DNA of 64,000 bases from positions 248,001 to 312,000 of IMG/VR virus record IMGVR_UViG_3300023174_000039; one strand, given 5' to 3'. The stretch's first letter is position 1. Each line of letters begins with the position of its first letter. This document shows positions 704 through 45,713 of the stretch, one piece after another. The notes below the pieces were generated by a model. It was given only the letters and a program-made list of their open reading frames with translations, searched no databases and was not told the origin of the DNA. The position numbers were made by a program, and so were the translations under genes.

Positions 704-1231
704 TACTCTGTCAAAGTTCACATGATTTGGGCATTTCCAATGTGCGTATTGTCGGGTTGCTTTAGCCTGTTGTGTATGTACCAGCTTGATACCCTGATTG
801 CCTGTGTACACAGGACCACCGGCGCTTTGCCATTGTGTGCCAAAGTGATATTCATATGCTGGTTCACGATAGTCCGGATGCCATGAAAAATCAAAACTAT
901 GTTGATCAATTCCTGCAGGAATCCGCCAGTTATCTACTGTAGACAATCTTGTGATAGTACGATCTACATGATAGTGTGTTTCAGTATAGCCCGCAGCAGG
1001 CACAAGATACACACCTGCATCTGCTTGATGTTGGCTAGGCCAGGCATGTCGCTGATGAGCTTGCCAAGGAACAGGCTCCCAAAGAAAATCCCACTCTCTA
1101 AGATCTGCTAAGTATGTGATCCACCAAAAGAACCTTGTGCGACTCAACTGCTGTGCATGCCCAATATCACTTGCTTCACGCTCATGAGCAAACAACCCTG
1201 GCTTCTTACCTGAATAAAAAATATCAAACAT
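2..1231 (-). CDS. Repeat-containing protein (Trp/His/Pro-rich 65-aa repeats), runs off the left edge; not in the ORF track
   Basis: Minus-strand frame from ATG at 1231 (in-frame TAA upstream at 1250-1252) reads MFDIFYSGKKPGLFAHEREASDIGHAQQLSRTRFFWWITYL... and stays open to the window edge. It contains repeats of DYSWHPxPxDPPYIYHFPxQxQSASGVTYTVPGATEIKL. Confidence 0.85.
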   Translation of the reverse strand, partial: MFDIFYSGKKPGLFAHEREASDIGHAQQLSRTRFFWWITYLADLREWDFLWEPVPWQAHQRHAWPSQHQADAGVYLVPAAGYTETHYHVDRTITRLSTVDNWRIPAGIDQHSFDFSWHPDYREPAYEYHFGTQWQSAGGPVYTGNQGIKLVHTQQAKATRQYAHWKCPNHVNFDRVDYSWHPDPLDPPYIYHFSSQYQSASGVTYTVPGATEIKLIDAFQVTTLPCKDNWLIPDSVSKSTVDYSWHPNPLDPPYIYHFPDQWQPASGVTYVVPGATEIKLVDAFQVTTLPCNQHWFIPDSVATASVDYSWHPDPFAPPYIYHFPDQWQSASGVTYTVPGATEIKLVDAFQVTTLPCKDNWSVPATIKVDSVNYSWHPNLLDPPYIYHFPSQYQSASGVTYTVPGATEIKL

Positions 1232-2336
1232 GATTAGAATAGACGAAATTTACAACAACACTTTTTGGCCCTGGATTAATAATCAAATCCCTGGCACTAG
1301 AACATACTTCTGTGATCCACCTGGCCGCAGTGATCCAGATGCATTGTTTAACTTTGGTCGAGATGACATTCCCGAAAACGATTTTGTGTTTTTCCATGAT
1401 CAAGAACCTGTGCATTTAGATCTTCATAGACCTTTGTTTACACAGGTCAGAGAGTACACCGAAGACATTAGAAAAAGCAACGGCGATGTCAAAAAAGGCG
1501 GGCATGTAATTGTCAGCGAGCATGGAGAATACGTGCGTGAGTTGTGTCGTGCATACGGATGGAAGAGCCATTATTACTTTTATCATGGATGGGCTTGCAA
1601 GGATTGGTTTCGAGGATATGATAAAACTTTCTTGATCCCTCGAGCAAAAGACAGAGCTCCTACACGCACATTTATGAGTCCTAATAGGATTGTTGCCGGC
1701 AAACGAGATCACAGAGTTTTGTTTTTGTATAATGTATTTAAGCACGGGCTAGATCAAAATTATATTTCGGCTCCTAGAATATGTCCTTACGAAAATGTAG
1801 ATATTTCACAGATAGCACTCAAGTATAATAACATATATCCTGACATAGAGCAAGTGTTCTTGGCAGCAGAATTGCCTAGATTGTTTGCCGGCGAAGACAC
1901 TCAGATCATGACCAGCTGTTGGTTGGGCAACTATGCAGAAGCACAAGACAGTTTGGTGTATGTTCCTACAGAGACTGTGTACTTTGGCAAACGATTACAC
2001 ATCACTGAGAAAACATTCAAGGCAATTGCCTTGGAAATGCCATTTGTGCTGGTAGCGCCTGCACACAGTTTGGAGTACATGCGCAGTTATGGATTCCAAA
2101 CATTTGATGGTATATTTGATGAGAGCTATGATCAGGAAACGGATGATAACAAACGTATTGAAAAAGTTACTCAGCTACTAAAAGATCTAGATAATTTATC
2201 CGTAGCAGAACGTCAACAGATACATCGTGCTTGCTTGCCCATTGTTCAACACAATTTTGAACACTTTTATGGCACCGGATTGGAAAACATCCTGTGGCCT
2301 GAACTGATCAACATGCTGAATGAACTTCGTAGCTGA
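1230..2336 (+). CDS. Glycosyltransferase-like protein, TEK family (GT10/fucosyltransferase-like C-terminal motif)
   Basis: PTETVYFGKRLHITEKTFKAI...PF...L...GFQTF...DESYD resembles the GT10 donor-binding ENxxxxxYxTEK motif; three paralogues in the window. Confidence 0.55.
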   Translation: MIRIDEIYNNTFWPWINNQIPGTRTYFCDPPGRSDPDALFNFGRDDIPENDFVFFHDQEPVHLDLHRPLFTQVREYTEDIRKSNGDVKKGGHVIVSEHGEYVRELCRAYGWKSHYYFYHGWACKDWFRGYDKTFLIPRAKDRAPTRTFMSPNRIVAGKRDHRVLFLYNVFKHGLDQNYISAPRICPYENVDISQIALKYNNIYPDIEQVFLAAELPRLFAGEDTQIMTSCWLGNYAEAQDSLVYVPTETVYFGKRLHITEKTFKAIALEMPFVLVAPAHSLEYMRSYGFQTFDGIFDESYDQETDDNKRIEKVTQLLKDLDNLSVAERQQIHRACLPIVQHNFEHFYGTGLENILWPELINMLNELRS

Positions 2337-3474
2337 TTCAATCATCAAAGGTCGGCCATACCCTGCACTGGCACAGCATCAAGCTATACCTTACACACAG
2401 GGCTGGAGAGAATTTGGAAAACATTGGCCACATACTACTCCTGCTGAGTTATTTGGACACATGAGTGATCATGGGTACCAGTATAGTTTGACCACAGAAG
2501 GCAACGGGTACTATGTAATTGGGCTGGGATTCTTTGATTTCACCATTGATTACTTTGCTCTTGTTGACCGTGCATTACTGCAAAGAATTCAGCAAAAGCT
2601 AGTGACTGTGCTGTTTTACTACCACGAAGGCGATAATCCGCACAACATCAAACAGCGTCTGGATTCATTATGCCAATTGCATGGATTGTCAACCGATTGC
2701 TATCGCTTTGTTAGCGGTAACACTGCTGCCAATTCAATCCCGGGCTTTGTGTACTTTCCTGATCATGAACTGTTGTTCTGGCGCAGGAATCAAGATGTAG
2801 CACCTGTTGTGTTGCACACTAACACAAGGCCATATACATTTGTCGCACTAAGCAGAACACACAAATGGTGGAGAGCAGCCATCATGGCAGACCTGTTACA
2901 AAGCAACATGCTGTCACAGAGTTTGTGGAGTTACAACACTGAGTTGCCACTGGGAGATGATCCTGCGGACAATCCCATAGAACAACTGCCCAATGTTGAT
3001 GTTGATGTGTTCATGACAAACGGACCATACAGATGTGACACATTAACAGTGGATGAACACAACAATCATGCATTAACAGTACCCGAGCATTACACGGATG
3101 CATATTTTAATGTTGTAGTAGAAACACACTTTGATGCTGACGGATCTGGTGGTGCTTTCCTAACTGAAAAAACATTCAAACCCATAAAGAATGCACAACC
3201 ATTTGTGCTGGTTGCACCAGCTGGTAGTTTACAATGCTTACGTGAGCTAGGATATCGTACATTTGATTCCGTGCTGGACAATAGCTACGATTTGGAAACA
3301 AACAACACTCAGCGTTGGCTCAAAGTAAAACAAACATTACAACAAATACAACAAGATCCACACGGCATTTTTTTACGCTGTCGTGATGATATACTGCACA
3401 ACCAGCAGTTATTTCAATCCACGAAACTGGACAGATTAAATACTTTACTAAAGAACCTATATGAACAAAATTAA
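2320..3474 (+). CDS. Glycosyltransferase-like protein, TEK family
   Basis: VVVETHFD...FLTEKTFKPI...PFV...LRELGYRTF...DNSYD; paralogue of 1230..2336. Confidence 0.55.
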   Translation: MNFVADSIIKGRPYPALAQHQAIPYTQGWREFGKHWPHTTPAELFGHMSDHGYQYSLTTEGNGYYVIGLGFFDFTIDYFALVDRALLQRIQQKLVTVLFYYHEGDNPHNIKQRLDSLCQLHGLSTDCYRFVSGNTAANSIPGFVYFPDHELLFWRRNQDVAPVVLHTNTRPYTFVALSRTHKWWRAAIMADLLQSNMLSQSLWSYNTELPLGDDPADNPIEQLPNVDVDVFMTNGPYRCDTLTVDEHNNHALTVPEHYTDAYFNVVVETHFDADGSGGAFLTEKTFKPIKNAQPFVLVAPAGSLQCLRELGYRTFDSVLDNSYDLETNNTQRWLKVKQTLQQIQQDPHGIFLRCRDDILHNQQLFQSTKLDRLNTLLKNLYEQN

Positions 3475-4486
3475 CTCCTACACCAGCTGGCAACCTCTTG
3501 AAGAGGTCATTGTGGGTCGCGCCTACTCACCTGATTACTTTGACTTTATTGACAATCCACAAGTGCGTAATCAACTGCAACAGATTCTCTACGAGACTGA
3601 AGAAGACTTGAACGGCCTACAACGAACCATTGAAAAGTATGGTGCTCGAGTACGTCGTCCTAACTTGCCCAGTAAAGACTCGTTTATTTGGCACCAAACA
3701 GAGGGCGGAGGTGCTCCGCTGCCGCCACTGACACCACGCGATTGGCAAATCACCATGGGCGACAAACTGTTGCGGGTGCTCAACATGGAAGAACTAGATG
3801 ACATCTGTGCCGACTTTGGCGATCAAGTTGTTAACCCTCACAAGAGTCGGTGGGACGAAGACTGTATCTTAAATGGTGCGAGTGCCAGCTGTATTGTGCG
3901 TGTGGGTCGCGATGTGTTCTTTGACAACTCAGATTTTTTACGTCCTGATCAAACCAAGTGGATTGTGGACAATGTGCTAGGAGAAGGGTATCGTGTTCAC
4001 GAAGCTATCACAGACGGTCATGGAGATGCTGTGTTTGCTATTCTCAAGCCCGGTGTGTTGCTATCCAGCAAACACGATGTGAACTTGGATCTGGCCAAAG
4101 ATTTTCCTGGCTGGGACGTTTGCAAGATCTGGGACAGTTCAATCTGGGCTGCCATGGAAGTGGGCAAGTTCAAATACGAGCAAACTCCTGGTGCTTGGTA
4201 TGTGCAAGGACAAACACCCACAGCTGAGTTCACAAAGTTTGTGGACACATATTTAAACAAGTGGACTGGCTTTGTGGCCGAAACTGTGTTTGATGTCAAC
4301 TGCCTGGTACTGGATGAAGAAAATGTTATCTTCAGCGCCTACAACCGAGAAGTGTTTGACTACTGTAAAAAACATCGTATCAATCCCATTATCAGTGAAC
4401 TGCGCCACAGCTACTTTTGGGACGGTGGCATCTCATGCTGTACACAAGATCTACGTCGTCGTGGCGGCCTAGAAGATTATCTATAA
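3461..4486 (+). CDS. Amidinotransferase (glycine/inosamine-phosphate amidinotransferase family)
   Basis: N-terminal NSYTSWQPLEEVIVGR, PRD motif, HGD (catalytic His), DVNCLVLDE, C-terminal GGISCCTQDLRR (catalytic Cys). Confidence 0.85.
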   Translation: MNKINSYTSWQPLEEVIVGRAYSPDYFDFIDNPQVRNQLQQILYETEEDLNGLQRTIEKYGARVRRPNLPSKDSFIWHQTEGGGAPLPPLTPRDWQITMGDKLLRVLNMEELDDICADFGDQVVNPHKSRWDEDCILNGASASCIVRVGRDVFFDNSDFLRPDQTKWIVDNVLGEGYRVHEAITDGHGDAVFAILKPGVLLSSKHDVNLDLAKDFPGWDVCKIWDSSIWAAMEVGKFKYEQTPGAWYVQGQTPTAEFTKFVDTYLNKWTGFVAETVFDVNCLVLDEENVIFSAYNREVFDYCKKHRINPIISELRHSYFWDGGISCCTQDLRRRGGLEDYL

Positions 4487-4508
4487 GCATGTTGCAGAGG
4501 ATATAAAA

Positions 4509-5177
4509 ATGAAAATATTGGTCAATGGCGACAGCAACATGTGCGGCGAAGAACTTGAAGACCGCAGTCTGGGTATATCATCACAGGTGGCCAAGATATT
4601 GGGTGCGGATATCAACAATCTTAGTCTCAGTGGCAGTAGCAATGATCGAATATACAACAGCACCATGGATTATGTTCTTAATCAGCCCACACCAGATCTG
4701 GTTCTGATTGGCTGGAGTGAAATGTGTCGTGTGCAATGGTTTTTGGATGATGTGCATCCGTTTGGTGAGTTTGTGGAAATAAACAACCTGGGTGTGGGAC
4801 GTCGTGAGTATCCAGACCATTATGCCAGGCGTCTAGAAAGATGGCACGAAATCAGCAACAATCTAGAATTTCGTACACATCTCAGTTACTACTGGCACGA
4901 ACGCATATATAACTTACACAAGTTTTTGCAAAACCGATGTATTAATCATTTGTTTTTTCATTCATTTCATGACTTCAAAGTAACTGATGCAAATGATCAG
5001 CTTGACTGGTCCAACTGTTTTATGGATCCTTACAGCTGGGACAACACCTATGTGCATTGGTGTGCAGATCAAGGATACAAAGAAATAACGCCTGGATGGT
5101 ATCATTATGAACCTGCGGGACAACGTGCGTGGGCCGAACGCATCGTTGAGTATATTAAACAACACAATATTATATGA
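4509..5177 (+). CDS. SGNH/GDSL hydrolase-like protein
   Basis: N-terminal ILVNGDS, NxSxSGSSN block, C-terminal HYEPAGQ. Confidence 0.65.
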   Translation: MKILVNGDSNMCGEELEDRSLGISSQVAKILGADINNLSLSGSSNDRIYNSTMDYVLNQPTPDLVLIGWSEMCRVQWFLDDVHPFGEFVEINNLGVGRREYPDHYARRLERWHEISNNLEFRTHLSYYWHERIYNLHKFLQNRCINHLFFHSFHDFKVTDANDQLDWSNCFMDPYSWDNTYVHWCADQGYKEITPGWYHYEPAGQRAWAERIVEYIKQHNII

Positions 5178-6289
5178 TTTATTCCGTTGACCAAATTCGA
5201 CATCTACATTTAGAAATAAGCAGTTTATGCAATGCCGCGTGTCCGTTGTGCCCTAGAAATTTCAATGGCTATAAACACAATGCAGGATACACAGAGCACA
5301 ACATGTCATTGGCAGAGGCACAAAAAATATTTCCCGTGGAGTTTGTGCAACAACTAGAGGTCATAGTGATCAATGGGAACTTTGGCGATGCTGTAATGAA
5401 TCCAGACACTGTGCCAATTGTTAGATATTTTAAAGAACACAATCCCAAGATACATATCAATATCAGCACCAATGGTGCCGCAAGAGATGCCAGATTCTGG
5501 AAAGACCTGGCAGCATCTGATGTTGAAGTGAGTTTTTGTATTGACGGCGTTGATGATTTCACGCACGGACTGTATCGACGCAACACAATGTACAGCACAA
5601 TCATGCGTAACTCTGCTACATTTATAGCTGCCGGAGGACGAGCTAACTGGAAGATGATTAAGTTTGATCATAATGGTCCATTTCAGGAACAGGCCCATCA
5701 GCTCAGCATACAAAGAGGATTCACGAATTTTTCACTGATCAACGACGGACGAGACATAGGACCTGTTTACAATGACCAAGGCGATTTACAATACACCATT
5801 GGAGAGGCACGGATCGATTGGCAGCCACCTGCAAGAATTGAACCGTTGTTAGAAATGAATTTTGATGAAAAATTCAAAGGTAATCAGATTATCTGGGTCA
5901 AGAAAGAAGAGATCAAAGAAATCCACTGTGAAGTTGCAGTATCAAAAAGTGTATATGTCAGCAGTACCGGAGATGTGTTCCCTTGTTGTTACATGGGCAT
6001 AAATCCTGCTGAATACAGAAACAATACCAGTCACGGATACAGCATGGAACAAATCAATCAGATTATGGCCAAGAACAATGCACTAGAGCACGATCTTGCC
6101 ACCTGTATTGCATGGTTTGATCACATTGAATCCAGCTGGAACAAAGACTCATTTGAGAATGGCAGATTACTGACCTGCAATCAATCATGCGGAGGCGACA
6201 ATCAGCGTCCGCAGTTTCATGTCAAAGAAGCCACAATATACTATAACGATGTTAACGGGTCCCAAACCCAGGATCAGGCCACCGACTAG
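5174..6289 (+). CDS. Radical SAM protein with C-terminal SPASM/twitch-like domain
   Basis: CNAACPLC (CxxxCxxC), STNG, C-terminal C...GDVFPCC...CNQSC. Confidence 0.9.
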   Translation: MIYSVDQIRHLHLEISSLCNAACPLCPRNFNGYKHNAGYTEHNMSLAEAQKIFPVEFVQQLEVIVINGNFGDAVMNPDTVPIVRYFKEHNPKIHINISTNGAARDARFWKDLAASDVEVSFCIDGVDDFTHGLYRRNTMYSTIMRNSATFIAAGGRANWKMIKFDHNGPFQEQAHQLSIQRGFTNFSLINDGRDIGPVYNDQGDLQYTIGEARIDWQPPARIEPLLEMNFDEKFKGNQIIWVKKEEIKEIHCEVAVSKSVYVSSTGDVFPCCYMGINPAEYRNNTSHGYSMEQINQIMAKNNALEHDLATCIAWFDHIESSWNKDSFENGRLLTCNQSCGGDNQRPQFHVKEATIYYNDVNGSQTQDQATD

Positions 6290-7061
6290 CATTTGGGTTC
6301 GGGGCATAAAAGTTTGTTAAATCAATGGGCCTTGATCCTGGCTCATAGTTTTGATATGTGTCAACTACCAGTGCGCTCATCATTCGATTGTTGTAAGAAC
6401 TAAAATGATTGCATCGACGGTCTTGTATCATGTAGTGCTTTATTATTTCTGCGTCAGTTCCTTTGCCCTCACTGAAACTCACATGAATCAATGGTGTTGT
6501 AAACACCACTCCGGGTAGCGCGGACTTGGAGATTTCTACTGTAAACGGATAGTTGTTAAAATGTATTTGTTTGATGTCTTTAAAAGTCCTGTCTATTTCG
6601 TGGAACCATTGCACTTGTGACCAATCTTGAAAAGAGTAATCAATCAAGTCTGCGGCCCAGGATTGTAGGGATTTTGCCAGCGTTGTTTTGTACTTGTACT
6701 TGGCATCATCTGAGTGCGGTTTCCAATCCAGGTTTAACATTTCATTTCCCACATCTCCATTTTCGCTATTGTACCTGGTGCTGTTGGTGTGACAAAATAC
6801 CATGAGTTCAATGGATTCAATCCATTCAGGATCATACTCCATATGATCAAATAGTTGTTTACGAGAATAATACCAACTGCGACCAGCAAATCCAAAACTG
6901 TACAAGTTCAACTCCAATGCCTCCGCAGTTAAATCCAGCCAACTCTTATTTTTTGGGTCAGAGTCTTTCTGCTGGGCCATCTTGTGCGGTATCACACTGT
7001 CCTCATTCCAACAACTGCAGAAACTGTCACCTACAAATACTATGTTTTTTTTAAATGGCAT
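6252..7061 (-). CDS. SGNH/GDSL hydrolase-like protein (probable start 7061, MPFKKNIVFVGDSF)
   Basis: VFVGDSF block, AGRS, C-terminal NHFS. The ATG at 7061 abuts the upstream gene's stop. Confidence 0.6.
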   Translation of the reverse strand: MPFKKNIVFVGDSFCSCWNEDSVIPHKMAQQKDSDPKNKSWLDLTAEALELNLYSFGFAGRSWYYSRKQLFDHMEYDPEWIESIELMVFCHTNSTRYNSENGDVGNEMLNLDWKPHSDDAKYKYKTTLAKSLQSWAADLIDYSFQDWSQVQWFHEIDRTFKDIKQIHFNNYPFTVEISKSALPGVVFTTPLIHVSFSEGKGTDAEIIKHYMIQDRRCNHFSSYNNRMMSALVVDTYQNYEPGSRPIDLTNFYAPNPNASRWPDPGFGTR

Positions 7062-10586: not shown

Positions 10587-10684
10587 TTATAGATAAATGG
10601 ATCTCGTTTGCGTAGTTCTTTTAGTTTTTTGCGATAGCGAATTTCCATGCGAATTCTGTCAATTAAATTTCGAATCCATTTCAT
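10583..10684 (-). CDS. 33-aa basic protein ending RDPFIYK, coupled to the carbamoyltransferase; not in the ORF track
   Basis: MKWIRNLIDRIRMEIRYRKKLKELRKRDPFIYK; ATG one nt after the previous stop, and its TGA overlaps the next ATG (ATGA). Confidence 0.75.
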   Translation of the reverse strand: MKWIRNLIDRIRMEIRYRKKLKELRKRDPFIYK

Positions 10685-10685
10685 A

Positions 10686-11756: not shown

Positions 11757-13056
11757 TTTGATCCCACCATTCTTTGACGTCAGTCCGTGCGCTCAATATC
11801 TTTGCCATATCAGTAGGCGCTGTGCGTATGCTTTCTAATTTTAACACACGAGCATGGCCTTTTGCAAGCCCTGCACGATAAGTATCTGGCCATTGTTCCT
11901 CAAACGTTGGTCTAGACTGTAGTTGCAACAACATGTCACGCATGACTTGTGTGCGGCATTGCGGCACTAGATCGTTTATCCAGGAATTCAGCAACGGTCT
12001 GGGCAGAGCCAATGGGCTCATTACAATATCTGGACCAAAGCTGAATATCACCTTGGCCAGCAATTCTACCCCATATTCTTCTGCAAGTTGTTCCACTGCT
12101 AGTATTTCTGTCATGCCCGGCAAGGTCAGCGTAAAGTCCAGGCGCATTTGTCTGCGGTTCTGCTGTATGGCTACGCCTTGTGCAAAGTTGTTTCTGAACT
12201 GTTCGTAGTCAAGTCCTGTGCGGATGTATTCTCCTGTGGCTCCTGTTCCGTCAAGACTGGCGCATATCTGCCAGTCGCGGATACAAGCCAAAATATCCCG
12301 ATATAGATTACAGCCCCTATAGTCAACGCGACTAAGATTGGTATTATACCTTGCATATACTCTACCTCCATCTCCTAATTCCACTATTCTTTTCATGTAG
12401 CGCCAGTGCTGTTCGTACATGAGTGGCTCGCCGCCTACCCAGTATATTTCTTCTACTCTGTGTTCTTCTACTGCTTGTGCAAACTCCGCTTCGATCTGTT
12501 GGTCTTGAAAAGCACTTATTTGAGTTCTTATTTCTGGACGCATCCAATTGTTCTTGGGATTTGACCAGTCTGTCATTTCATTTTGTTTTTGTTCTGTTTC
12601 CCACGCACTGCTCAACATATCGCCACAGGTTCTGCATTTAAAATTGCACAGGTTTGAAAAACGATAATCCCAGCTTACAGGCTTCATTGTTGTGTAGCCA
12701 GTGGCGTCTGTTGTGGCTGCTATGTCTTCGTACTTGTGCTTGAACAAATGCCAGAAGTAGGTTCTGTACACATCTGTGTTCAACAGCTTTGAATTGCATA
12801 CATCACACTCAGGCAAAGTTTCACCGGCCAACATGCGACGACGCACTGATCGCATGTGATCACTGTTCCAATGCTGTTCCAAGGTAATGGGAATGTACCG
12901 GCCTGTGCCTGCCGCAGTGTCTATGTACTGTTCAAAACTCTGTGCTGGTTCTCTAGAGGCACAGCACATTCTTCGTTCAGTTTGGGGGCTTAGGTATGTG
13001 TGCGTCCATGGGGCCATACACAATGATTCGGGTTTATTTTGACTCTGCATATGCAA
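11743..13056 (-). CDS. Radical SAM protein with N-terminal twitch-like domain (subtype B)
   Basis: LCMAPWTH...MCC...CDVC, CNFKCRTC, GGEP, YNTN, EYIRTG. Confidence 0.9.
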   Translation of the reverse strand: MHMQSQNKPESLCMAPWTHTYLSPQTERRMCCASREPAQSFEQYIDTAAGTGRYIPITLEQHWNSDHMRSVRRRMLAGETLPECDVCNSKLLNTDVYRTYFWHLFKHKYEDIAATTDATGYTTMKPVSWDYRFSNLCNFKCRTCGDMLSSAWETEQKQNEMTDWSNPKNNWMRPEIRTQISAFQDQQIEAEFAQAVEEHRVEEIYWVGGEPLMYEQHWRYMKRIVELGDGGRVYARYNTNLSRVDYRGCNLYRDILACIRDWQICASLDGTGATGEYIRTGLDYEQFRNNFAQGVAIQQNRRQMRLDFTLTLPGMTEILAVEQLAEEYGVELLAKVIFSFGPDIVMSPLALPRPLLNSWINDLVPQCRTQVMRDMLLQLQSRPTFEEQWPDTYRAGLAKGHARVLKLESIRTAPTDMAKILSARTDVKEWWDQIGTN

Positions 13057-13981
13057 TTATGGGATTTATTATTTCATTTATTATCCGAGACTCTGCCAAA
13101 TTATGATCATAAAATCGATTGTGATTGTGTTCTAACTTTTGTAATGTCAATTGGTCGTGAGGTACTGGATCAAAATTCTTTACGGTACTGACCAATGCTG
13201 TCAATCTCTCGGTGTAATCACTGATATTATCATAACTTTCGTCAAATAGATTGTCAAATGTTTCAAATCCCTGGGACTGGAGATATTTTAAATGTCCCGC
13301 TTGTGCCATTACCACAAAAGGATGATAAAAAGCCATGGGTTTAAATGTCTTTTCTGTGACAAATATTTCAGGAGCATCCACAAGTGTTTCTGCCACTATG
13401 CTAAAATATGTGCTATCATACCAGTCTGGGTTGAAGTGTCGCTGAAAGTTTACATCATTCATATCATTGTCATTGGGCAAGGTTCTACCATGCATGGTAT
13501 AACTCCATACCAGTTGATCTAGTATTTCTGCCAAGTGCACCACCAATGCGTCGCGATGCTGCCGCCGCTGACGCATCGGCAGCAGTGCCAGTTTTTGATA
13601 GGTCCTATTAGGTTGATAACCGGACCAGTTGGCTTTGTTTAGGCTGGCTTCATTGTACCAAAACCAATTCTGATTGTGCAAAACAAAACAATTCTCTACT
13701 GGGTCAGGGAATTTATGCATTATCTGTGGTGACTCCCATAAATTATCTAATACAATTTTATAAGAATCATTGAGGTACGGTCTATACCAGTCTGTATAAT
13801 ACCAGGCTGAAGAACTGGAGTGTCTAAGAGCATTTGCAACTAACACATGATCATTGCGGTTATAATCAACACCCTCTTGCCAATTTACTATATCAAAATA
13901 TGGTTCTACCAATCTCTGTAGTAGTACTTGATGAAATGATGTCCTGTCATCCTGGTTGATTAATAATTTAAGTCGCGGCAT
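13034..13981 (-). CDS. Glycosyltransferase-like protein, TEK family
   Basis: FSIVAET...FVTEKTFKPM...PFVV...GFETF...DESYD. Confidence 0.55.
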   Translation of the reverse strand: MPRLKLLINQDDRTSFHQVLLQRLVEPYFDIVNWQEGVDYNRNDHVLVANALRHSSSSAWYYTDWYRPYLNDSYKIVLDNLWESPQIMHKFPDPVENCFVLHNQNWFWYNEASLNKANWSGYQPNRTYQKLALLPMRQRRQHRDALVVHLAEILDQLVWSYTMHGRTLPNDNDMNDVNFQRHFNPDWYDSTYFSIVAETLVDAPEIFVTEKTFKPMAFYHPFVVMAQAGHLKYLQSQGFETFDNLFDESYDNISDYTERLTALVSTVKNFDPVPHDQLTLQKLEHNHNRFYDHNLAESRIINEIINPIIAYAESK

Positions 13982-15191
13982 GATTATATGAATAATTTAT
14001 CAATGCTGAAAATTCTGGTTCAACCACAGCTAGGTCTTGTTCACGTTTACGGTCCAGGTCACGTATGCGCATACGCATGATGTTGCCGTCAGTGGATGCA
14101 CCCTTCATCATGAATTCCACAATACGATCAAACTCTTCACGGTACTGAGCAGGTACATCAGCAGAGTTTAAATGGTCTGCAATGGCTGTTTTGGCATCAT
14201 CAGGCAGGGTAGCAATAGAGAAGTACCAGGCATCATGCATCATGTTCCAGTACACAAAGTCAAATTGTTGTTCTACAATCCAGTGGGCCAGTTGATCAAT
14301 ATAGCGCACATTAAAGATATTCACTGTGCTACAGCATTGCAGTTGAATATTGGGATAGTCTTCCCTTAATAAACGAAAACGATCAATATTGAACACCACG
14401 TCTGCCCACACAGCATTTGAACGCTGATACTCAAAGCGTTCGCGCAAGTCATCAATCGAAAATGCAATTTCTACTGTTTTGAAATGCTTCCAGATAGCTT
14501 CTGCTTGTTCAGGAAACTGTGTGCCATTTGTGTTGTAGTGTATTTCAACTTGATGTGCAATACCACGATCCACTAGACCCTGTAACATATTGAAGTGTTC
14601 CTGGATCATGAATGGCTCGCCACCAGTGAATTCAATGTAACGAATGTCAGTCAGAATGTGATCAATTTCTGCCCAGAACGTTTCATTTTCTCTGGGCCAG
14701 GCGCCTGCTTGTAGCATTTGATAATGAAAGCTGGCTTTCTTCTCGTCGCCACGCAGTTGTGTGAGTTCTTCAGCGGCAAATTGACTTGAGCTCCAGGATC
14801 CACATATGCGGCATTTTAAGTTGCAAATGTTGCCCAGTTTGAGATCCATGAACATCAAGGGCTTGGCATCTGCTGTCCAGGCCTGATCGTCAATCACGTG
14901 CTTGAGTCGGTTGAGTGTGTGCATGCGTTTGCTGGTGCGTCCTGAACGCTCTTCGTTCCAGCACTTGCGACATGTCTGTGGCTTTTCGCCATCCAAGAAC
15001 TGTTGCCGTAGACCGCGCATGTGAGTGCTGTTTTGTATGTCTTTAAAGTTGGCAGTCATCAAGCTGAATTTCACGTTGTTGTCATCGACAATTTCGTCAT
15101 CAGCCAAACAGCAAGGGCGCACTGTGCCAATCGGGCTAGCTTCAAGACTGACCCAAGGTAGTACGCAGAATTTTTCGTGTGGTAATTTCAT
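13968..15191 (-). CDS. Radical SAM protein with N-terminal twitch-like domain (subtype B)
   Basis: FCVLPW...PCC...CRKCW, CNLKCRIC, TGGEP, YNTNG. Confidence 0.9.
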   Translation of the reverse strand: MKLPHEKFCVLPWVSLEASPIGTVRPCCLADDEIVDDNNVKFSLMTANFKDIQNSTHMRGLRQQFLDGEKPQTCRKCWNEERSGRTSKRMHTLNRLKHVIDDQAWTADAKPLMFMDLKLGNICNLKCRICGSWSSSQFAAEELTQLRGDEKKASFHYQMLQAGAWPRENETFWAEIDHILTDIRYIEFTGGEPFMIQEHFNMLQGLVDRGIAHQVEIHYNTNGTQFPEQAEAIWKHFKTVEIAFSIDDLRERFEYQRSNAVWADVVFNIDRFRLLREDYPNIQLQCCSTVNIFNVRYIDQLAHWIVEQQFDFVYWNMMHDAWYFSIATLPDDAKTAIADHLNSADVPAQYREEFDRIVEFMMKGASTDGNIMRMRIRDLDRKREQDLAVVEPEFSALINYSYNHAAT

Positions 15192-16477
15192 TTTAATGCT
15201 TTCAATTCAGGAATAACATCCAGGATGTTTTCTTTTCTAATTTCGTCCAGCTGTTGAGTCTTGCTCCAGAATTTAGGGATCAAATGACTGTTGTCTGTAG
15301 CTTGCAAATAGTTAATAGCTGATTCAAAACCCTGTGTGGCACGACCCAACCGGTCCTGGGGGCGTAACCATGCCAGGTGCTGTTGATATAACTCAATCAA
15401 TTCAGCTTTGTATTCTGGTGTGGCAATATCAATTCTATAATACGCAGGGTCTTGCAGTATGTTTACGTTTAGATCCTGAGGGTTTAATAGACCTTTTTCA
15501 ACCCAGTCACGATGAAACTCAGGCAAGTGTTGAGCATTCATAATGCTCAACGTGGGCGAAATATAAAAATCTACTTCAGGACAAATGCTCAGCATGTCTC
15601 TGCGATTTTGTTCCACCACTGACCAGTCTGTGCCCTTGCGTATGTATTCGCCACGTGCACCAGAATCGTCTAGACTTGCGCCCACTGCCACTGATTGAAA
15701 CTGTTTCCAGTATTCAAAAACTGAGTTACCTTTAAGGTCTGTGTGTGTGAAGTTTGTGTTGTATATTAGTCGTACATCAAATCGTTGGCGTTTGACCAGC
15801 TCGTCAAGAATATGATAGTGTTCTTCCATCAACAGCGGTTCGCCGCCGGCAAAATAAATTTGTTCTACATAGTCTAGATGCGGCTCTAGTTGTTCCCACA
15901 CATCTGTTTCTGTGCGGCCAGCATAGTTGAGAACTTTGTTTTTTTGTTTCCAATCACCGCCGGCCAATTTGGCTTGATCTTGATACCACGAACTACTAAA
16001 GATATGACCACAACTGCGGCAACTTAGATTGCACAGATTACTGAAGCGAATGTCCCAGTAGGTCATTTCAAATTGGTCAGTATGTCCTGTAGAATCTGTA
16101 GCTTGTACTCGATCCACATGGTGCCCATGGTGCTTGTTTGCTGATTGTCGCCCTGTGAAGAAACCCGATTGTTCTTGTTCGTAGCAACGTCCGCAGGCAG
16201 CATTGGGTATTTCACTCAGCATGTCCTTGCGCAATTGGCGCTGTGCTGGGCTATTCCATATTTCTTTAAGAGTGTTTGTGCGACAATTGCCAATTTGCCC
16301 CACACCCATTTCGGCGTGACAGCACGGGTATGCTTCGCCTGTGGGGTAGGCATGTAAATGAATCCAAGGATAGATACAGAAAGTTTTGGATTCTGTCAAC
16401 AAGAATCTTTCACGTTCTGTCAGTGCGCTCATGTCTCCACGCACTAGATCACTGCTGTTGTATTTGTATTGTGTCAT
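15188..16477 (-). CDS. Radical SAM protein with N-terminal twitch-like domain (subtype B)
   Basis: FCIYPWIH...PCC...CGRCY, CNLSCRSC, AGGEP, YNTN. Confidence 0.9.
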   Translation of the reverse strand: MTQYKYNSSDLVRGDMSALTERERFLLTESKTFCIYPWIHLHAYPTGEAYPCCHAEMGVGQIGNCRTNTLKEIWNSPAQRQLRKDMLSEIPNAACGRCYEQEQSGFFTGRQSANKHHGHHVDRVQATDSTGHTDQFEMTYWDIRFSNLCNLSCRSCGHIFSSSWYQDQAKLAGGDWKQKNKVLNYAGRTETDVWEQLEPHLDYVEQIYFAGGEPLLMEEHYHILDELVKRQRFDVRLIYNTNFTHTDLKGNSVFEYWKQFQSVAVGASLDDSGARGEYIRKGTDWSVVEQNRRDMLSICPEVDFYISPTLSIMNAQHLPEFHRDWVEKGLLNPQDLNVNILQDPAYYRIDIATPEYKAELIELYQQHLAWLRPQDRLGRATQGFESAINYLQATDNSHLIPKFWSKTQQLDEIRKENILDVIPELKALK

Positions 16478-17801
16478 ACCATTCTTTTAAGTTGGGGAAT
16501 ACGCTGCCAAAATTCTTGTGTCTGCGATGATCGTATTGCGAATAGAACTGTTTGAAATCATTGTGCAGTGAAGGCATGTCAAATGTGTCCGAATGAGGGG
16601 TCTTTACTACATCTAGGTAATCAATTAGCCGTTGTGTGTGATTTACTTCGTGTTCGTGCAACAAAGAGTTGGTACAATTGTTTGCAAGCCATTTTTCTAG
16701 CGCCACACGGAATTGTTCACGCAGTTCTGTGGGCATTACAAGTGCAGATTGAAAACTGGGAAAGCGCAAGATATTTAATGTAAAATTCACACGTTCACGA
16801 CCGTATGTGCGTTTTAATTCCAGCAATTGATCTAGTAACTCGGGCAATGTGGGCAGGCACAAGGCATTGATTGTACACATCACGTGTACTGCTTTTACTG
16901 TATTACTCTGCAACAGCAGGTTTATGTTTGAAAGCCATTGTGCATAGTCCAGGCCGTCACGTATGTACTCAGCACTTGTACCAGTGGCTTCCATACTGGT
17001 GTAAAGTTCCACATGCGGCAGTGAACGGATGGCATCAATGAACTCCTGCAGTTTTTCGGTATCAAAACTCAGATTTGAATTGATAGCTAGTTTTGTAGTT
17101 GACTTGCCCTGATTTGTTTTGAACCAATCAATCAGCTTCCAGGTGTAGCCCGACATCAAGGGCTCTCCGCCGGTTATTCTTAGTTCTTGCAAGGTTTTGT
17201 GGAGGTCTGTTTCCCACCATTCAAAGAAGGCGTTGACGTAAGGATTATCCTCACCGAATTTATAAAGTTGAGCACTATTATGCTCATGAGTAAAGTGGTT
17301 GCGACCATCTGACTGTAACTTAACATAAGGTCCATTTCGCTTGATGTCATTGACCCATGTGCTTGAAAATGCAGGATTGCAGTAACTACAAGCAAGCTGG
17401 CAAGTGCGATCAAAAGCAATTTCCAAGGTGCGTAGGTTAACGTCTTCGTGTACAGGTGTGTTAAAAGCTTCATTTAATGATTCTATAGGATATATCTTTG
17501 ATTTATACACACGATCGCTCACAGCATCACGACCCATGTCTTCAATCTTCCAACAGTACTCGCAGCCTGCTGGTCGTTCACCTGCTAGCATTTTTGCACG
17601 ATCATCACGTTTTTGTCGTGTGTTATGCAAGGCAGCAGGATTAATAATTACTTCTTTTTCAGTCACGTGATGTGCTGGTGGATGATGACAACTTGTGGTT
17701 TGTCCTGAGCCCAACCAGATGGTTGCATTGTACCATTTAGCGGCACAAAAACTAGCTGACTTGGTATCAAGGTGTTGTTGACGGAATTCTAGATCGTTCA
17801 T
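16449..17801 (-). CDS. Radical SAM protein with N-terminal twitch-like domain (subtype A)
   Basis: FCAAKW...SCHHPPAH...CEYCW, CQLACSYC, TGGEP; close paralogue of 7051..8463. Confidence 0.9.
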   Translation of the reverse strand: MNDLEFRQQHLDTKSASFCAAKWYNATIWLGSGQTTSCHHPPAHHVTEKEVIINPAALHNTRQKRDDRAKMLAGERPAGCEYCWKIEDMGRDAVSDRVYKSKIYPIESLNEAFNTPVHEDVNLRTLEIAFDRTCQLACSYCNPAFSSTWVNDIKRNGPYVKLQSDGRNHFTHEHNSAQLYKFGEDNPYVNAFFEWWETDLHKTLQELRITGGEPLMSGYTWKLIDWFKTNQGKSTTKLAINSNLSFDTEKLQEFIDAIRSLPHVELYTSMEATGTSAEYIRDGLDYAQWLSNINLLLQSNTVKAVHVMCTINALCLPTLPELLDQLLELKRTYGRERVNFTLNILRFPSFQSALVMPTELREQFRVALEKWLANNCTNSLLHEHEVNHTQRLIDYLDVVKTPHSDTFDMPSLHNDFKQFYSQYDHRRHKNFGSVFPNLKEWYDTIQIQQQ

Positions 17802-18891
17802 TTAAAAATTGCTCTAATAGTAAGGGAAGGTGAGCACGTTGTTGTTGGTTGTACTCCACAAGATGTTGCTGATTGTATTTACAGATGTCGCGGCTGGCTC
17901 GCCAGAAATGTTCAGGACCACTTTTCAAAATATAACGCACTGTTTCTATTATACGCTTGATCCTGGCATGTGGACAATCAATTTGGTCGTAGGATTCATC
18001 TATAATGCCATCAAATGTTTGAAAGCCAGCATGCTGTAGGTCTCGAAGATAGCCGCAATTGGCAGCAACCACAAACGGATGTGCCATCAGAATTGGCTTG
18101 TAGATCTTTTCTGTTCTAAATGAATACGGATAATCAAATATGGTTTCTGACACTAGGCTAAACCAAGAGTCTGTGTAGCAAAAATGATTAACTATGGCAT
18201 CGCCCCAGGTGTTACCAAACAACTCATGCTTGATAAAACCCGATGTGCTCACCGTGGTCAATTGTGGCACAGCACGTGAAATTTCATACTCTGGAGGCAG
18301 TAATCTTATGTGCTCCTGTTTGTCGGGAGTGAGTCTGGATGTGAATTCCATTTCTACTGTGCTGCCTAGATTGGTCCACAATGCACGATCCAATAGTCCT
18401 TGATCACGCAGACCGTCAATTAAACATTTACGATGGGGGCGTAAGCGGCCGTTTAAAAACAAAAACTCATAGGGTCTTGAATCTGTATACTCCCATAATG
18501 CTTGTATCTGTGATGCCCGATTTTCCCTGTATTCAACAATGTTTGAAAAGTAACAATCTGTACTGAAATGATTCCACCCAGGTTCTAGGCCACCAGATGT
18601 CATTAACAGTATGCGGCCATCACGCACATGGTCTTCTATCATGAGTCGTTTCAATTGTAGCAGGATAGTTTCGCTTCCTTCTGCAGGATTACAAAATACA
18701 ATCCGACCCGGATGTTCCGTTGCCCATGTGGTTATTGCTGTCCAGTTGTCTTTTAACAACAGCCGCCCAATGATGTAAATATTTTCTGGATTCAAGTCAG
18801 GCATTTGCCAAAATGAGTCGTCGGCATAGGGCTTGAGTAAATCCCACACTTCAGCCCATTCGTCTACCACAATCTTATGTGTTCCTAGCAT
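17767..18891 (-). CDS. Glycosyltransferase-like protein, TEK family
   Basis: FSLVSET...FRTEKIYKPI...HPFVV...GFQTF...DESYD. Confidence 0.55.
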   Translation of the reverse strand: MLGTHKIVVDEWAEVWDLLKPYADDSFWQMPDLNPENIYIIGRLLLKDNWTAITTWATEHPGRIVFCNPAEGSETILLQLKRLMIEDHVRDGRILLMTSGGLEPGWNHFSTDCYFSNIVEYRENRASQIQALWEYTDSRPYEFLFLNGRLRPHRKCLIDGLRDQGLLDRALWTNLGSTVEMEFTSRLTPDKQEHIRLLPPEYEISRAVPQLTTVSTSGFIKHELFGNTWGDAIVNHFCYTDSWFSLVSETIFDYPYSFRTEKIYKPILMAHPFVVAANCGYLRDLQHAGFQTFDGIIDESYDQIDCPHARIKRIIETVRYILKSGPEHFWRASRDICKYNQQHLVEYNQQQRAHLPLLLEQFLNERSRIPSTTP

Positions 18892-26216: not shown

Positions 26217-26224
26217 TATTTATA
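26217..26224 (-). promoter_or_regulatory. T4-type late promoter TATAAATA
   Basis: Exact TATAAATA 25 nt upstream of ATG 26191, with AGGA in the leader; a gp55-like gene is in the window. Confidence 0.7.
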
Positions 26225-45705: not shown

Positions 45706-45713
45706 TATTTATA
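45706..45713 (-). promoter_or_regulatory. T4-type late promoter TATAAATA
   Basis: Exact TATAAATA, 5 nt before ATG 45700. Confidence 0.65.

What the first reader, a model, noticed from the sequence alone, without database searches (positions are those of the whole stretch)
1230..18891. Four paralogous TEK-motif proteins interleaved with radical SAM genes
Seen: 1230, 2320, 13034 and 17767 share a C-terminal ET...TEKxxKxI...PF...GFxTF...DESYD...HN core but have unrelated N-termini; two sit between radical SAM genes. Known: a similar TEK motif binds GDP-fucose in GT10. Inference: an unclassified GT-B family with swapped acceptor domains, possibly one transferase per radical-SAM-modified sugar.
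Basis: partly seen in the sequence, partly recalled or inferred. Interest (0 to 1): 0.6.

Follow-up and report, generated by a model that had tools for sequence, protein, structure and literature searches.

The report
Phage GT10-like glycosyltransferases among radical SAM genes
A freshwater jumbo phage carries five copies of an unannotated sugar-transferase family that is very large and found mostly in viruses; its donor site resembles fucosyltransferases, and the genes sit in a conserved block with six unusual radical SAM enzymes whose glycan product is unknown.

Summary
Four paralogs share a C-terminal ET…TEKxxKP…PF…GFxTFD…DESYD…R…HN core (pairwise BLAST E 1e-14 to 1e-25). A fifth paralog lies outside the window. 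Two of the four sit between radical SAM genes.

AlphaFold models of P0003 and P0004 (pLDDT 94 and 91) are complete GT-B folds. The best or tied-best solved matches are H. pylori α1,3-fucosyltransferase (GT10), T4 β-glucosyltransferase and other GT-B enzymes (Z 11-13). A profile comparison aligns the TEK block with GT10's YxTEK GDP-fucose motif (P 5e-4; all controls weaker). No Pfam, NCBIfam or PHROG model matches, so this is GT10-like, not GT10.

The family has about 13,000 clusters at 50% identity. In the sources searched it is almost entirely viral and unnamed.

The N-terminal halves fall into three conserved classes. The two classes modelled are Rossmann-like, so they have diverged rather than become unrelated.

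The gene order v-R-B-R-R-R-A-R-u-K-w-B-C-Z-N recurs, in full or with small changes, in about 30 jumbo-phage contigs (R = N-terminal-twitch radical SAM, K = carbamoyltransferase, A/B/C = the TEK classes). TEK and radical SAM copy numbers do not track one to one.

Most likely this is a late-expressed, wholly soluble pathway that builds a heavily tailored glycan. Donor, acceptor and radical SAM chemistry are unknown.

The parts
1230..2336 (+). TEK glycosyltransferase, N-domain class C (P0001, 368 aa)
   Evidence: Translation and motif HITEKTFKAI. C-terminal core BLAST E 1e-14 to 1e-25 against the paralogs. Class C together with the fifth paralog. Conserved DQEP and E97 in the N-domain.
2320..3474 (+). 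TEK glycosyltransferase, N-domain class B (P0002, 384 aa)
   Evidence: Class B with P0004. Used in alignment A3.
3461..4486 (+). Unknown 341-aa protein 'w', often found next to the class B/C TEK genes
   Evidence: phrog_25854, unknown function. Homolog in 11 of 36 long related loci. Position conserved.
4509..5177 (+). 222-aa protein, weak DUF6071 match
   Evidence: Pfam E 7e-6, just under the cut-off.
5174..6289 (+). Radical SAM enzyme with a C-terminal SPASM domain (classical order)
   Evidence: PF04055 and PF13186 over cut-off. Not a member of NF033640. Homolog in only 1 of 36 long related loci, so not a conserved member of the module.
6252..7196 (-). SGNH/GDSL-like protein (IVFVGDSF motif). 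As read from its first start codon it overlaps the 3' end of the next gene by 146 nt, so its true start is probably further downstream.
   Evidence: Translation, and homologs in L059 and L006.
7051..8463 (-). N-terminal-twitch radical SAM enzyme (NF033640)
   Evidence: 260 bits against a cut-off of 170.
8460..9110 (-). GDSL/SGNH hydrolase-like protein
   Evidence: PF13472 E 1e-4, below cut-off.
9111..10586 (-). NodU/CmcH-type carbamoyltransferase
   Evidence: Carbam_trans_N 120 bits and Carbam_trans_C 167 bits. Present in 28 of 36 long related loci.
10686..11756 (-). Unknown 356-aa protein 'u', conserved member of the module
   Evidence: No family, PDB or Atlas lead. Present in 22 of 36 long loci, always between a radical SAM gene and the carbamoyltransferase.
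11743..13056 (-). N-terminal-twitch radical SAM enzyme
   Evidence: NF033640, 266.6 bits.
13034..13981 (-). TEK glycosyltransferase, class A (P0003, 315 aa), inside the radical SAM block
   Evidence: AF2 pLDDT 94.1, GT-B fold. VIA Z 12.1 to H. pylori FucT 2nzx and 11.5 to T4 BGT. 490 full-length homologs.
13968..15191 (-). N-terminal-twitch radical SAM enzyme
   Evidence: NF033640, 332 bits.
15188..16477 (-). N-terminal-twitch radical SAM enzyme
   Evidence: NF033640, 405 bits.
16449..17801 (-). N-terminal-twitch radical SAM enzyme
   Evidence: NF033640, 305.5 bits.
17767..18891 (-). TEK glycosyltransferase, class B (P0004, 374 aa), inside the radical SAM block
   Evidence: AF2 pLDDT 91.4. GT-B matches Z 11-13 spanning residues 1-370.
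18875..20266 (-). N-terminal-twitch radical SAM enzyme
   Evidence: NF033640, 312 bits.
20260..21192 (-). Unknown 310-aa protein 'v', usually the outer edge of the module
   Evidence: No family. Present in 22 of 36 long loci. Order shown.
2..1231 (-). First 410 residues of a 2047-aa repeat protein 'Z' (G000 243088-249231), divergent from P0001 and running off the left end of the window
   Evidence: At least 8 copies of a W-x-P-x-P-x-D-P-P-Y-I-Y-x-F…G-A-T-E repeat. Homolog in 17 of 36 long loci, next to the class C TEK gene. No Pfam or NCBIfam match.
26217..26224 (-). TATAAATA, a T4-type late-promoter-like box 26 nt upstream of the first gene of the minus-strand run that leads into the cluster
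   Evidence: Genome-wide, 10 of 15 occurrences lie within 60 nt upstream of a same-strand start. A gp55-like late sigma factor is encoded at 55045-55944.

Best explanation
The four TEK proteins, plus a fifth elsewhere in the genome, are soluble GT-B glycosyltransferases of a very large, unnamed family found mostly in viruses.

Their C-terminal domain is a nucleotide-sugar-binding Rossmann domain. Its signature is a strand ending in E-T, then a loop, then [F/H]-x-T-E-K at a helix start, preceded by an invariant Arg. This corresponds to the metal-independent donor site of GT10 fucosyltransferases (F-x-x-x-x-E-N … Y-x-T-E-K). I infer that Lys and Arg hold the diphosphate and that Glu contacts the sugar.

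The N-terminal domains (three old classes, A, B and C) would bind different acceptors, so the paralogs add different linkages or act at successive steps.

The genes belong to a conserved ~20-25 kb phage module: five or six N-terminal-twitch radical SAM enzymes, an O-carbamoyltransferase, SGNH proteins, several unknown proteins, a 2047-aa repeat protein and, just upstream, an SDR sugar dehydratase/epimerase and a DegT aminotransferase.

I take the module to be a late-expressed, fully cytoplasmic pathway that assembles and heavily tailors (carbamoylation, possibly acylation, radical chemistry) a glycan on a soluble acceptor. The most likely acceptor is a virion protein such as the neighbouring giant fibre or repeat proteins.

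Shown: fold, motif correspondence, family size, synteny, absence of membrane proteins. Inferred: transferase activity, inverting mechanism, donor, acceptor, timing.

My sub-probabilities: GT-B glycosyltransferase 0.85. Donor site homologous to GT10 0.6. GDP-fucose as the actual donor 0.2 or less. Virion protein as acceptor about 0.35.
For: Fold:
- P0003 pLDDT 94 and P0004 pLDDT 91, both with two Rossmann-like domains.
- Foldseek top hits are T4 BGT, phage HY126 GT, SdgB and H. pylori FucT.
- VIA-align Z 12.1 (rmsd 4.2, 265 aligned) to FucT 2nzx for P0003. FUT9, FUT11 and FUT13 are also listed.

Motif:
- GT10 Tyr246/Glu249/Lys250 bind GDP-fucose (PMC11468063). FUT9 uses Arg202/Lys256 for the diphosphate (PMC12717137).
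- hhalign of 167 TEK proteins against 24 bona fide Bacteroidota GT10 proteins aligns FSlVxET…FxTEKTfKPI…PFI with FxiaxEN…YxTEK…iPIYwG. Score 36.8, P 5e-4.
- Controls: GT4 16.5, reversed GT10 9.5, best of 20 column shuffles 16.9, GT10 against GT4 21.6.
- The nearest named Atlas clusters and the first annotated BFVD hits are GT10.

Family:
- 13,043 representatives at E <= 1e-3 and more than 519 viral contigs.
- Only 7 loci in one genome per species by pattern scan, at least four of them phage contigs inside MAGs.

Module:
- The same gene order recurs in about 30 loci.
- In 36 long loci: radical SAM in 29-31 (depending on the paralog used as query), carbamoyltransferase in 28, 'u' in 22, 'v' in 22.

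Glycan context:
- GalE, a heptose-epimerase-like protein, an SDR and a DegT aminotransferase are in the genome. The last two lie just upstream behind a TATAAATA box.
- A bacterial 577-aa homolog sits among GT4, a GT32-like gene, UDP-glucose dehydrogenase and a carbamoyltransferase.

Soluble and late:
- No TM-like segment in any cluster protein.
- The cluster is co-directional with, and directly downstream of, baseplate and giant-fibre genes, behind a late-promoter-like box.
Against: - No activity data, and no RNA runs were found.
- Z scores of 10-13 are tied across many GT-B families, so fold alone does not single out GT10.
- The profile match to GT10 covers only 56 columns, with HHalign probability 31%.
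- PF00852 does not match at all.
- I could not superpose the model on 2NZY, so the equivalence of Arg143/154/159 and of any N-domain catalytic base to GT10 residues is unverified. The conserved N-domain acidic residues differ between classes.
- No GDP-fucose pathway was recognised in the phage.
- TEK genes also occur without the radical SAM block.
- The acceptor is a guess. Published opinion on similar tail-fibre-adjacent GT/radical SAM cassettes in pelagimyophages favours modification of the host O-chain (PMC7029224).
Confidence: 0.6

Rival explanations
1. The module remodels the host cell surface (LPS O-chain, capsule or another envelope glycan) during infection, for example to block superinfection. 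The TEK transferases would act on host lipid-linked or nucleotide-linked intermediates at the cytoplasmic face.
For: - Pelagimyophage genomes carry glycosyltransferases and radical SAM cassettes in the tail-fibre-adjacent hypervariable region, and their authors favour O-chain modification (PMC7029224).
- The bacterial TEK-like gene lies in a polysaccharide locus with a UbiA prenyltransferase, GT4 and a sugar dehydrogenase.
- The phage encodes GalE and a heptose-epimerase-like enzyme.
Against: - No initiating polyprenyl-phosphate transferase, flippase, polymerase or any other membrane protein is in the ~30-gene cluster.
- The cluster follows structural genes behind a late-promoter-like box, which is late for exclusion.
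- The module is very large for a serotype-conversion function.
Confidence: 0.2
2. The radical SAM/SPASM-type enzymes modify a peptide or protein, in the manner of a RiPP or of protein cross-linking. The TEK enzymes then glycosylate that same polypeptide. The sugars themselves would not be radical SAM substrates.
For: - SPASM/twitch radical SAM enzymes are mostly peptide or protein maturases. Weak matches to PapB, StsB, anSME and mycofactocin maturases appear.
- GT10 members FUT10 and FUT11 are protein O-fucosyltransferases (PMC11949838, title).
- Two giant repeat-rich proteins flank the cluster.
Against: - No conserved small precursor ORF was seen.
- The N-twitch family's other weak matches are to nucleotide-acting enzymes: MoaA, viperin, QueE and NrdG activase.
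- The carbamoyltransferase, SDR, DegT and SGNH genes point to sugar chemistry.
Confidence: 0.15
3. The TEK proteins glycosylate phage DNA, like T4 alpha- and beta-glucosyltransferases, as an anti-restriction hypermodification.
For: - T4 BGT, T4 AGT and phage HY126 GT are among the best fold matches.
- The genome is T4-like.
- Virus GTs are known to hypermodify DNA (Pyle et al. 2024, cited in PMC12619734).
Against: - No thymidylate-synthase/dCMP-hydroxymethylase-like gene is in the 95%-complete genome, so there is no obvious 5-hm-pyrimidine acceptor.
- The fold scores are tied with unrelated GT-B enzymes.
- The donor motif matches GT10, not GT63/GT72.
- Five transferases plus a carbamoyltransferase and an aminosugar pathway are more than any known DNA glycosylation system uses.
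Confidence: 0.05

Closest known systems
CAZy GT10 alpha-1,3/4-fucosyltransferases (Pfam PF00852; H. pylori FucT 2NZW/2NZX/2NZY, human FUT9)
   Same: GT-B fold. Best or tied-best structural match (Z 12.1). No DxD motif, as in the metal-independent GT10 enzymes. The block 'strand-E-[T/N] … aromatic-x-T-E-K-helix … P-[F/I]-[V/I]' aligns between profiles with P 5e-4 and beats all controls. An invariant Arg sits at the start of the C-domain, as in GT10.
   Different: No match to PF00852 even at E 10. The loop between E and TEK is 2-5 residues longer. There is an extra conserved C-terminal signature (GFxTFD, DESYD, R, HN) that I did not find in the 24 GT10 sequences. The N-domains are unrelated in sequence. 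Donor unknown, and no GDP-fucose pathway was seen in the phage.
T4 beta-glucosyltransferase (GT63) and other phage DNA glycosyltransferases (T4 AGT, HY126 GT)
   Same: Phage-encoded, soluble, minimal GT-B enzymes of similar size. Foldseek top hit (E 3.8e-5) and VIA Z 11.2-12.3.
   Different: No sequence or motif similarity. No hydroxymethyl-pyrimidine pathway in this genome. Here there are five paralogs inside a sugar-tailoring module.
Tail-fibre-adjacent 'hypervariable region' of pelagimyophages and cyanomyophages, which carries glycosyltransferases and radical SAM cassettes (PMC7029224)
   Same: T4-like aquatic myophages with GT and radical SAM genes next to the tail-fibre/baseplate module.
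   Different: That paper names GT8 as the main GT family and gives no conserved order. Here the GTs are an unnamed family and the order R-B-R-R-R-A-R-u-K is conserved across about 30 contigs. Whether the pelagimyophage cassettes are the same module was not tested.
NCBIfam NF033640, 'twitch domain-containing radical SAM protein' (N_Twi_rSAM)
   Same: Six radical SAM genes in the window score 260-405 bits against a cut-off of 170. Thirteen matches in the genome.
   Different: The family has a name but, as far as I could find, no assigned reaction. Six papers contain the phrase, all apparently about other enzymes. In Bacteroidota it was found in 5 of 301 genomes sampled (over the family cut-off in 2), as small paralog groups, once next to a carbamoyltransferase.

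Membership tests
GT-B fold glycosyltransferase superfamily | Two Rossmann-like beta/alpha/beta domains with a cleft between them, and C-terminal helices crossing back | tested here: met
   AF2 models of P0003 (pLDDT 94.1) and P0004 (91.4). More than 180 and more than 300 PDB chains at Z >= 8 respectively, and the rows shown are almost all GT-B enzymes spanning residues 1-315 and 1-370.
CAZy GT10 / Pfam PF00852 Glyco_transf_10 | Significant match to the curated family model | tested here: not met
   hmmscan at E <= 1 finds nothing for the four proteins. A six-frame genome search with PF00852 at E <= 10 finds nothing. The profile of 46 homologs finds no PDB sequence.
CAZy GT10 / Pfam PF00852 Glyco_transf_10 | Donor-site motif aromatic-x-T-E-K (Tyr246, Glu249, Lys250 of H. 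pylori FucT) after a strand ending in E-N | tested here: met
   FVTEK, FLTEK, HITEK, FRTEK and HLTEK after AET/VET/TET/SET/LET. T-E-K is invariant in classes B and C and 87-100% conserved in class A. It aligns to the GT10 block by hhalign with controls weaker. Residue roles are from PMC11468063.
CAZy GT10 / Pfam PF00852 Glyco_transf_10 | Diphosphate-binding Arg at the start of the C-domain (Arg195 in HpFucT, from my own knowledge; Arg202 in FUT9) and a catalytic Glu in the N-domain (Glu95, from my own knowledge; Glu137 in FUT9) | tested here: inconclusive
   An invariant Arg exists (R143 / R154 / R159-R162) on the first strand-helix of the C-domain. No residue-level superposition on 2NZY was possible. 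N-domain acidic candidates differ by class (WE83 in A, D10 in B, DQE59P in C).
CAZy GT10 / Pfam PF00852 Glyco_transf_10 | Uses GDP-beta-L-fucose and inverts configuration | not testable with these tools
   Needs enzyme assays. No GMD/Fcl pair was recognised in the genome and no NTP_transferase.
GT63-type phage DNA beta-glucosyltransferase | Acts on 5-hydroxymethylcytosine DNA, so the genome encodes a dCMP hydroxymethylase | tested here: not met
   There is no PF00303-like gene in the 95%-complete genome, while 10 of 14 control genomes ring. The similarity is at fold level only.
NF033640 N-terminal-twitch radical SAM (the neighbouring genes) | Full-length match above the curated 170-bit cut-off, with CxxxCxxC after an N-terminal Cys-rich twitch/SPASM domain | tested here: met
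   Six genes score 260-405 bits. Pfam places SPASM N-terminal of Radical_SAM in three of them. CxxxCxxC is present.
NodU/CmcH carbamoyltransferase (the neighbouring gene 9111-10586) | Both Carbam_trans_N and Carbam_trans_C domains | tested here: met
   119.9 and 166.6 bits. It scores well below the NodU equivalog cut-off (132 against 1000 bits), so it is a family member, not NodU itself.

The most novel reading that the evidence does not exclude
A widespread module of freshwater jumbo phages makes a previously unseen kind of viral glycan. Five or six paralogous N-terminal-twitch radical SAM enzymes each perform a different radical tailoring step (for example C-methylation, epimerisation, deoxygenation or C-C/C-O cross-linking) on sugars or nucleotide sugars. 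A dedicated family of GT10-like transferases found mostly in viruses then assembles these on virion proteins. That would be both a new CAZy-level glycosyltransferase family and the first multi-radical-SAM glycan pathway.
Probability: 0.25. Interest if true: 0.85.

Novelty: new variant of a known kind. Interest (0 to 1): 0.62.

Why it matters
If the TEK proteins are active transferases, one of the largest protein families without an annotation (about 13,000 clusters at 50% identity, found almost entirely in viruses in the sources searched) gets a fold, a donor-site model and a testable activity. It would probably merit its own CAZy family next to GT10.

The conserved interleaving with five or six paralogs of a radical SAM family that has no known reaction gives that family a concrete biochemical context: sugars, carbamoylation, phage late genes. 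That makes the question of what N-twitch radical SAM enzymes do directly testable.

It also bears on how large aquatic phages decorate their virions or their hosts. This has so far been shown experimentally mainly for mycobacteriophage capsids and for T-even DNA.

Tried and rejected
Family and sequence scans that found nothing:
- Pfam, PHROGs and NCBIfam scans of the TEK proteins found nothing useful. The only hit was a chance-level DUP match; one NCBIfam call failed because of a bad reference.
- PDB sequence searches with 4- and 46-sequence profiles gave only a chance Vps74 hit, or nothing.
- megablast and tblastn against 50,697 deposited phage records found nothing for the region, P0003 or P0002. 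That collection may leave out the window's own record.

Comparison with GT10:
- The first hhalign against only 5 GT10 sequences was not significant (E 0.26), although it aligned the right motif. It became P 5e-4 only with broader alignments.

N-domains:
- hhalign between N-domain classes aligns only the Arg-bearing strand-helix, which belongs to the C-domain. The true N-domains are not detectably similar in sequence.

Neighbouring unknown proteins:
- Unknown proteins u, v, w and the 2047-aa protein gave no Pfam, NCBIfam, PDB or Atlas lead.

Literature:
- Searches for the module (radical SAM + carbamoyltransferase + glycosyltransferase + phage; 'twitch domain-containing radical SAM'; nucleotide-sugar radical SAM) found nothing describing it.
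- The 'moraphage' paper mentions four GT orthogroups but no radical SAM genes, and I could not link it to this lineage.

Ideas rejected or not pursued:
- One TEK gene per radical SAM gene is rejected on the counts.
- DNA glycosylation was considered and ranked low.
- No protein-complex prediction was run, because I make no binding claim.

Operators' notes:
- No alternative genetic code was used.

Full report
**Where the window lies.** The window is bases 248001-312000 of a 331,654-bp IMG/VR virus record judged 95% complete. It encodes a gp55-like late sigma factor, gp46/47-like nuclease subunits, baseplate wedge and hub proteins and a 4936-aa protein. Its baseplate wedge protein is about 34% identical to those of Agrobacterium phage Atu_ph07 and the RaK2-like group of jumbo myophages. 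It is therefore an uncultivated, distantly T4-like jumbo phage. Near-identical DNA occurs in lake and freshwater metagenomes of several studies, and no RNA run holds it. Contigs of an independent study tile the stretch 13034-18891 without differences.

**The observation.** All four ORFs exist as described. Their alignment has 29 invariant columns, concentrated in the last ~130 residues: E-T, T-E-K-x-x-K, P-F-V, G-x-x-T-F-D, D-x-S-Y-D, R and N.
- The C-terminal parts match pairwise at 33-41% identity, E 1e-14 to 1e-25. The N-terminal parts give nothing, or only marginal hits.
- A fifth paralog (496 aa, TEKSLRPI) lies at G000 88821-90311.
- P0003 and P0004 each sit between two radical SAM genes.

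**Fold.**
- With 46 homologs as alignment, P0003 folds at pLDDT 94.1 into two Rossmann-like domains.
- Foldseek puts T4 beta-glucosyltransferase, phage HY126 glycosyltransferase, SdgB and H. pylori alpha-1,3-fucosyltransferase at the top.
- VIA-align ranks the three H. pylori FucT entries first (Z 12.1-11.4, about 265 residues aligned), then T4 BGT (11.5) and human FUT9 (11.1). Many GT-B enzymes lie within one Z unit.
- P0004, from another N-domain class, folds at pLDDT 91.4. It matches GT-B enzymes over residues 1-370 at Z 11-13.

Both N-terminal halves modelled are ordinary GT-B N-domains.

**Relation to GT10.** In GT10, Tyr246, Glu249 and Lys250 of H. pylori FucT contact GDP-fucose (PMC11468063). 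FUT9 uses Arg202 and Lys256 for the diphosphate and Glu137 as base (PMC12717137).
- I fetched 24 proteins that pass Pfam's GT10 cut-off from Bacteroidota genomes. They read F-x-L-C-x-E-N-x(5)-Y-x-T-E-K-…-P-[IV]-Y.
- hhalign of 167 TEK-family proteins against them aligns FSlVxET…FxTEKTfKPI…PFII with that block. Score 36.8, P 5e-4, 56 columns.
- Controls are all weaker: 26 GT4 proteins 16.5 (at a non-equivalent place), reversed GT10 9.5, best of 20 column shuffles 16.9, and GT10 against GT4 21.6.
- The nearest named ESM-Atlas clusters are GT10 (0.81-0.82, a lead only). In BFVD the first annotated matches after 21 uncharacterised phage proteins include GT10 proteins of giant viruses.
- Against membership: PF00852 does not match at any threshold. 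The E-to-TEK loop is longer. The family has its own extra C-terminal signature.

I therefore call it GT10-like in its donor site, not a GT10 member.

**Size and range of the family.**
- The word search found 490 full-length relatives of P0003. Every one is either called a hypothetical protein by its source or has no name, and none carries a Pfam domain.
- The exhaustive profile search found 13,043 cluster representatives at E <= 1e-3 and 9,715 at <= 1e-10. I used this costly search once, because the family scans had left the protein open.
- A pattern scan of IMG/VR found more than 519 viral contigs.
- A pattern scan of one genome per prokaryote species found 7 loci. At least four of these are phage contigs inside MAGs, including two Haliscomenobacter MAG contigs that carry nearly the same cluster.
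- Two are genuine Chitinophagales chromosomal genes of 571-577 aa. One lies among GT4, a GT32-like gene, a UbiA-type gene, a UDP-glucose dehydrogenase and a carbamoyltransferase.
- P0002 and P0003 find no match in deposited phage records.

**N-terminal domains.** Single-linkage clustering of N-terminal parts from 167 family members gives three main classes:
- A: P0003, with 72 members.
- B: P0002 and P0004, with 35 members.
- C: P0001 and the fifth paralog, with 23 members.

Between classes, only the Arg-bearing first strand-helix of the C-domain aligns. Each class has its own conserved N-domain residues: WE83 in part of A, D10 and Y39 in B, DQE59P and E97 in C. The paralogs are thus old, each conserved across many phages. 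'Swapped' domains are not shown. Divergent acceptor domains are plausible.

**The module.** Six radical SAM genes in the window belong to NCBIfam NF033640, with a twitch domain N-terminal of the radical SAM core (260-405 bits against a cut-off of 170). The genome has 13 matches to that family and 18 CxxxCxxC proteins.
- Also present are a classical radical SAM/SPASM enzyme, a NodU/CmcH-type carbamoyltransferase, two SGNH-like proteins and several unknown proteins.
- Just left of the window lie a 2047-aa repeat protein, a DegT aminotransferase and an SDR dehydratase/epimerase.
- In 36 related viral loci of at least 18 kb, N-twitch radical SAM genes occur in 29-31 depending on the paralog used as query, the carbamoyltransferase in 28, unknown 'u' in 22, unknown 'v' in 22 and the repeat protein in 17.
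- The order v-R-B-R-R-R-A-R-u-K-(w)-B-C-Z-N recurs, in full or with small changes, in about 30 loci.
- In Bacteroidota, N-twitch radical SAM genes are rare (5 of 301 genomes sampled, over the family cut-off in 2). They occur as small paralog groups, once directly beside a carbamoyltransferase.

**Copy numbers.** Across 30 viral records, matches to the TEK profile and to NF033640 correlate weakly (Spearman 0.37, p 0.04). The records are fragmentary and related to one another, so this overstates independence.
- Records with one TEK match and 5-7 radical SAM matches exist.
- About a quarter of the long loci have a class A TEK gene with no radical SAM block, or only one distant radical SAM gene.

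One transferase per radical-SAM-modified sugar is not supported.

**Clues to target and timing.**
- No protein of the cluster has a TM-like segment. There is no initiating transferase, flippase or polymerase.
- There is no thymidylate-synthase-like gene and no nucleotidyltransferase. GalE, a heptose-epimerase-like protein, an SDR and DegT are present.
- TATAAATA, the T4 late-promoter box, occurs 15 times in the genome. Ten of these lie within 60 nt upstream of a same-strand start. One heads the minus-strand run that leads from 26191 into the cluster, and one heads the SDR/DegT operon.
- The whole minus-strand run continues directly from the baseplate and giant-fibre genes.

These points favour a late, cytoplasmic pathway acting on a soluble acceptor. 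I rank virion protein first (about 0.35), host envelope second, a modified polypeptide third and DNA last. None of these is shown.

**Verdict.**
- The core interpretation (an unclassified GT-B family with a GT10-like TEK donor motif) is supported.
- 'Swapped acceptor domains' and 'one transferase per radical SAM product' are not supported.
- The TEK family is a new variant of a known kind. The conserved TEK / N-twitch radical SAM / carbamoyltransferase module has not been described in the literature I could search, and it is the more interesting object.

Noticed in passing
window 2-1231 (-), continuing to G000 243088-249231: A 2047-aa protein rich in Trp, Pro and Tyr. It has at least 8 copies of a ~60-aa repeat (D-Y-S-W-H-P-x-P-x-D-P-P-Y-I-Y-H-F…Q-W-Q…G-A-T-E-I-K) and a C-terminal 'DIVFISNGEP' stretch. 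No Pfam or NCBIfam match. A homolog lies next to the class C TEK gene in 17 of 36 related loci. Its start codon overlaps that of P0001 on the opposite strand.
   Followed up: partly
whole genome G000 (e.g. 21338-22516, 29347-30591, 42573-45012, 48364-49866, 114057-115184, 198919-200094): The phage has 13 matches to the N-terminal-twitch radical SAM family and 18 proteins with CxxxCxxC. That is an unusually high radical SAM load for a virus. Seven of the N-twitch copies lie outside the window in other contexts.
   Followed up: partly
window 26217-26224 (-) and 45706-45713 (-); G000-wide: TATAAATA is not more frequent than chance in the window. Genome-wide, however, 10 of 15 copies lie within 60 nt upstream of a same-strand gene start, as expected for a T4-type late promoter read by the gp55-like sigma factor at 55045-55944.
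   Followed up: partly
L090 and L091 (contigs of 148 kb and 183 kb in a Haliscomenobacter sp. MAG): Two contigs binned into a Saprospiraceae MAG carry the same TEK/radical SAM/carbamoyltransferase cluster, with protein E-values down to 1e-249. They look like jumbo-phage contigs inside the bin. This is either contamination of the MAG or a weak hint at the host.
   Followed up: partly
window 26994-41804 (-): A 4936-aa ORF rich in Thr, Ser, Gly and Asn, with an FG-GAP repeat match. It lies between the baseplate wedge gene and the glycan cluster, and is presumably a giant fibre or decoration protein. It is one candidate acceptor.
   Followed up: no
L134 (Chitinophagales chromosome, contig of 1.46 Mb) and L139 (G282): Bacterial counterparts exist. 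A 577-aa TEK-like protein lies in a polysaccharide locus with a carbamoyltransferase. In another genome, two N-twitch radical SAM genes lie within 3 kb of a 603-aa carbamoyltransferase. The three gene families therefore associate outside phages too.
   Followed up: partly
G000 204462-205274 and 202858-204397: A GTP cyclohydrolase I gene lies next to GalE and a short (209-aa) DegT-like fragment. FolE in phages is often part of 7-deazaguanine DNA modification. I did not look for the other genes of that pathway.
   Followed up: no
window 6252-7196 (-): An ORF with an SGNH-type GDS motif overlaps the 3' end of the radical SAM gene 7051-8463 by 146 nt if read from its first start codon. It has homologs in two related loci, so it is a real gene, probably with a start further downstream.
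   Followed up: partly
records G407, G410, G422, G427 (class B TEK matches): Several matches to the TEK profile in related phage records contain one to three in-frame stops (TGA or TAA). These could be broken copies or matches that run across gene borders. Not examined.
   Followed up: no
BFVD hit A0A6J5TB28 (788 aa), Atlas cluster of 571 aa, P0237 (738 aa): The TEK-type fold also occurs fused to a UDP-glucose/GDP-mannose dehydrogenase N-terminal domain and to an MTS-type methyltransferase, and as an apparent tandem protein. Such fusions fit sugar-nucleotide chemistry.
   Followed up: no
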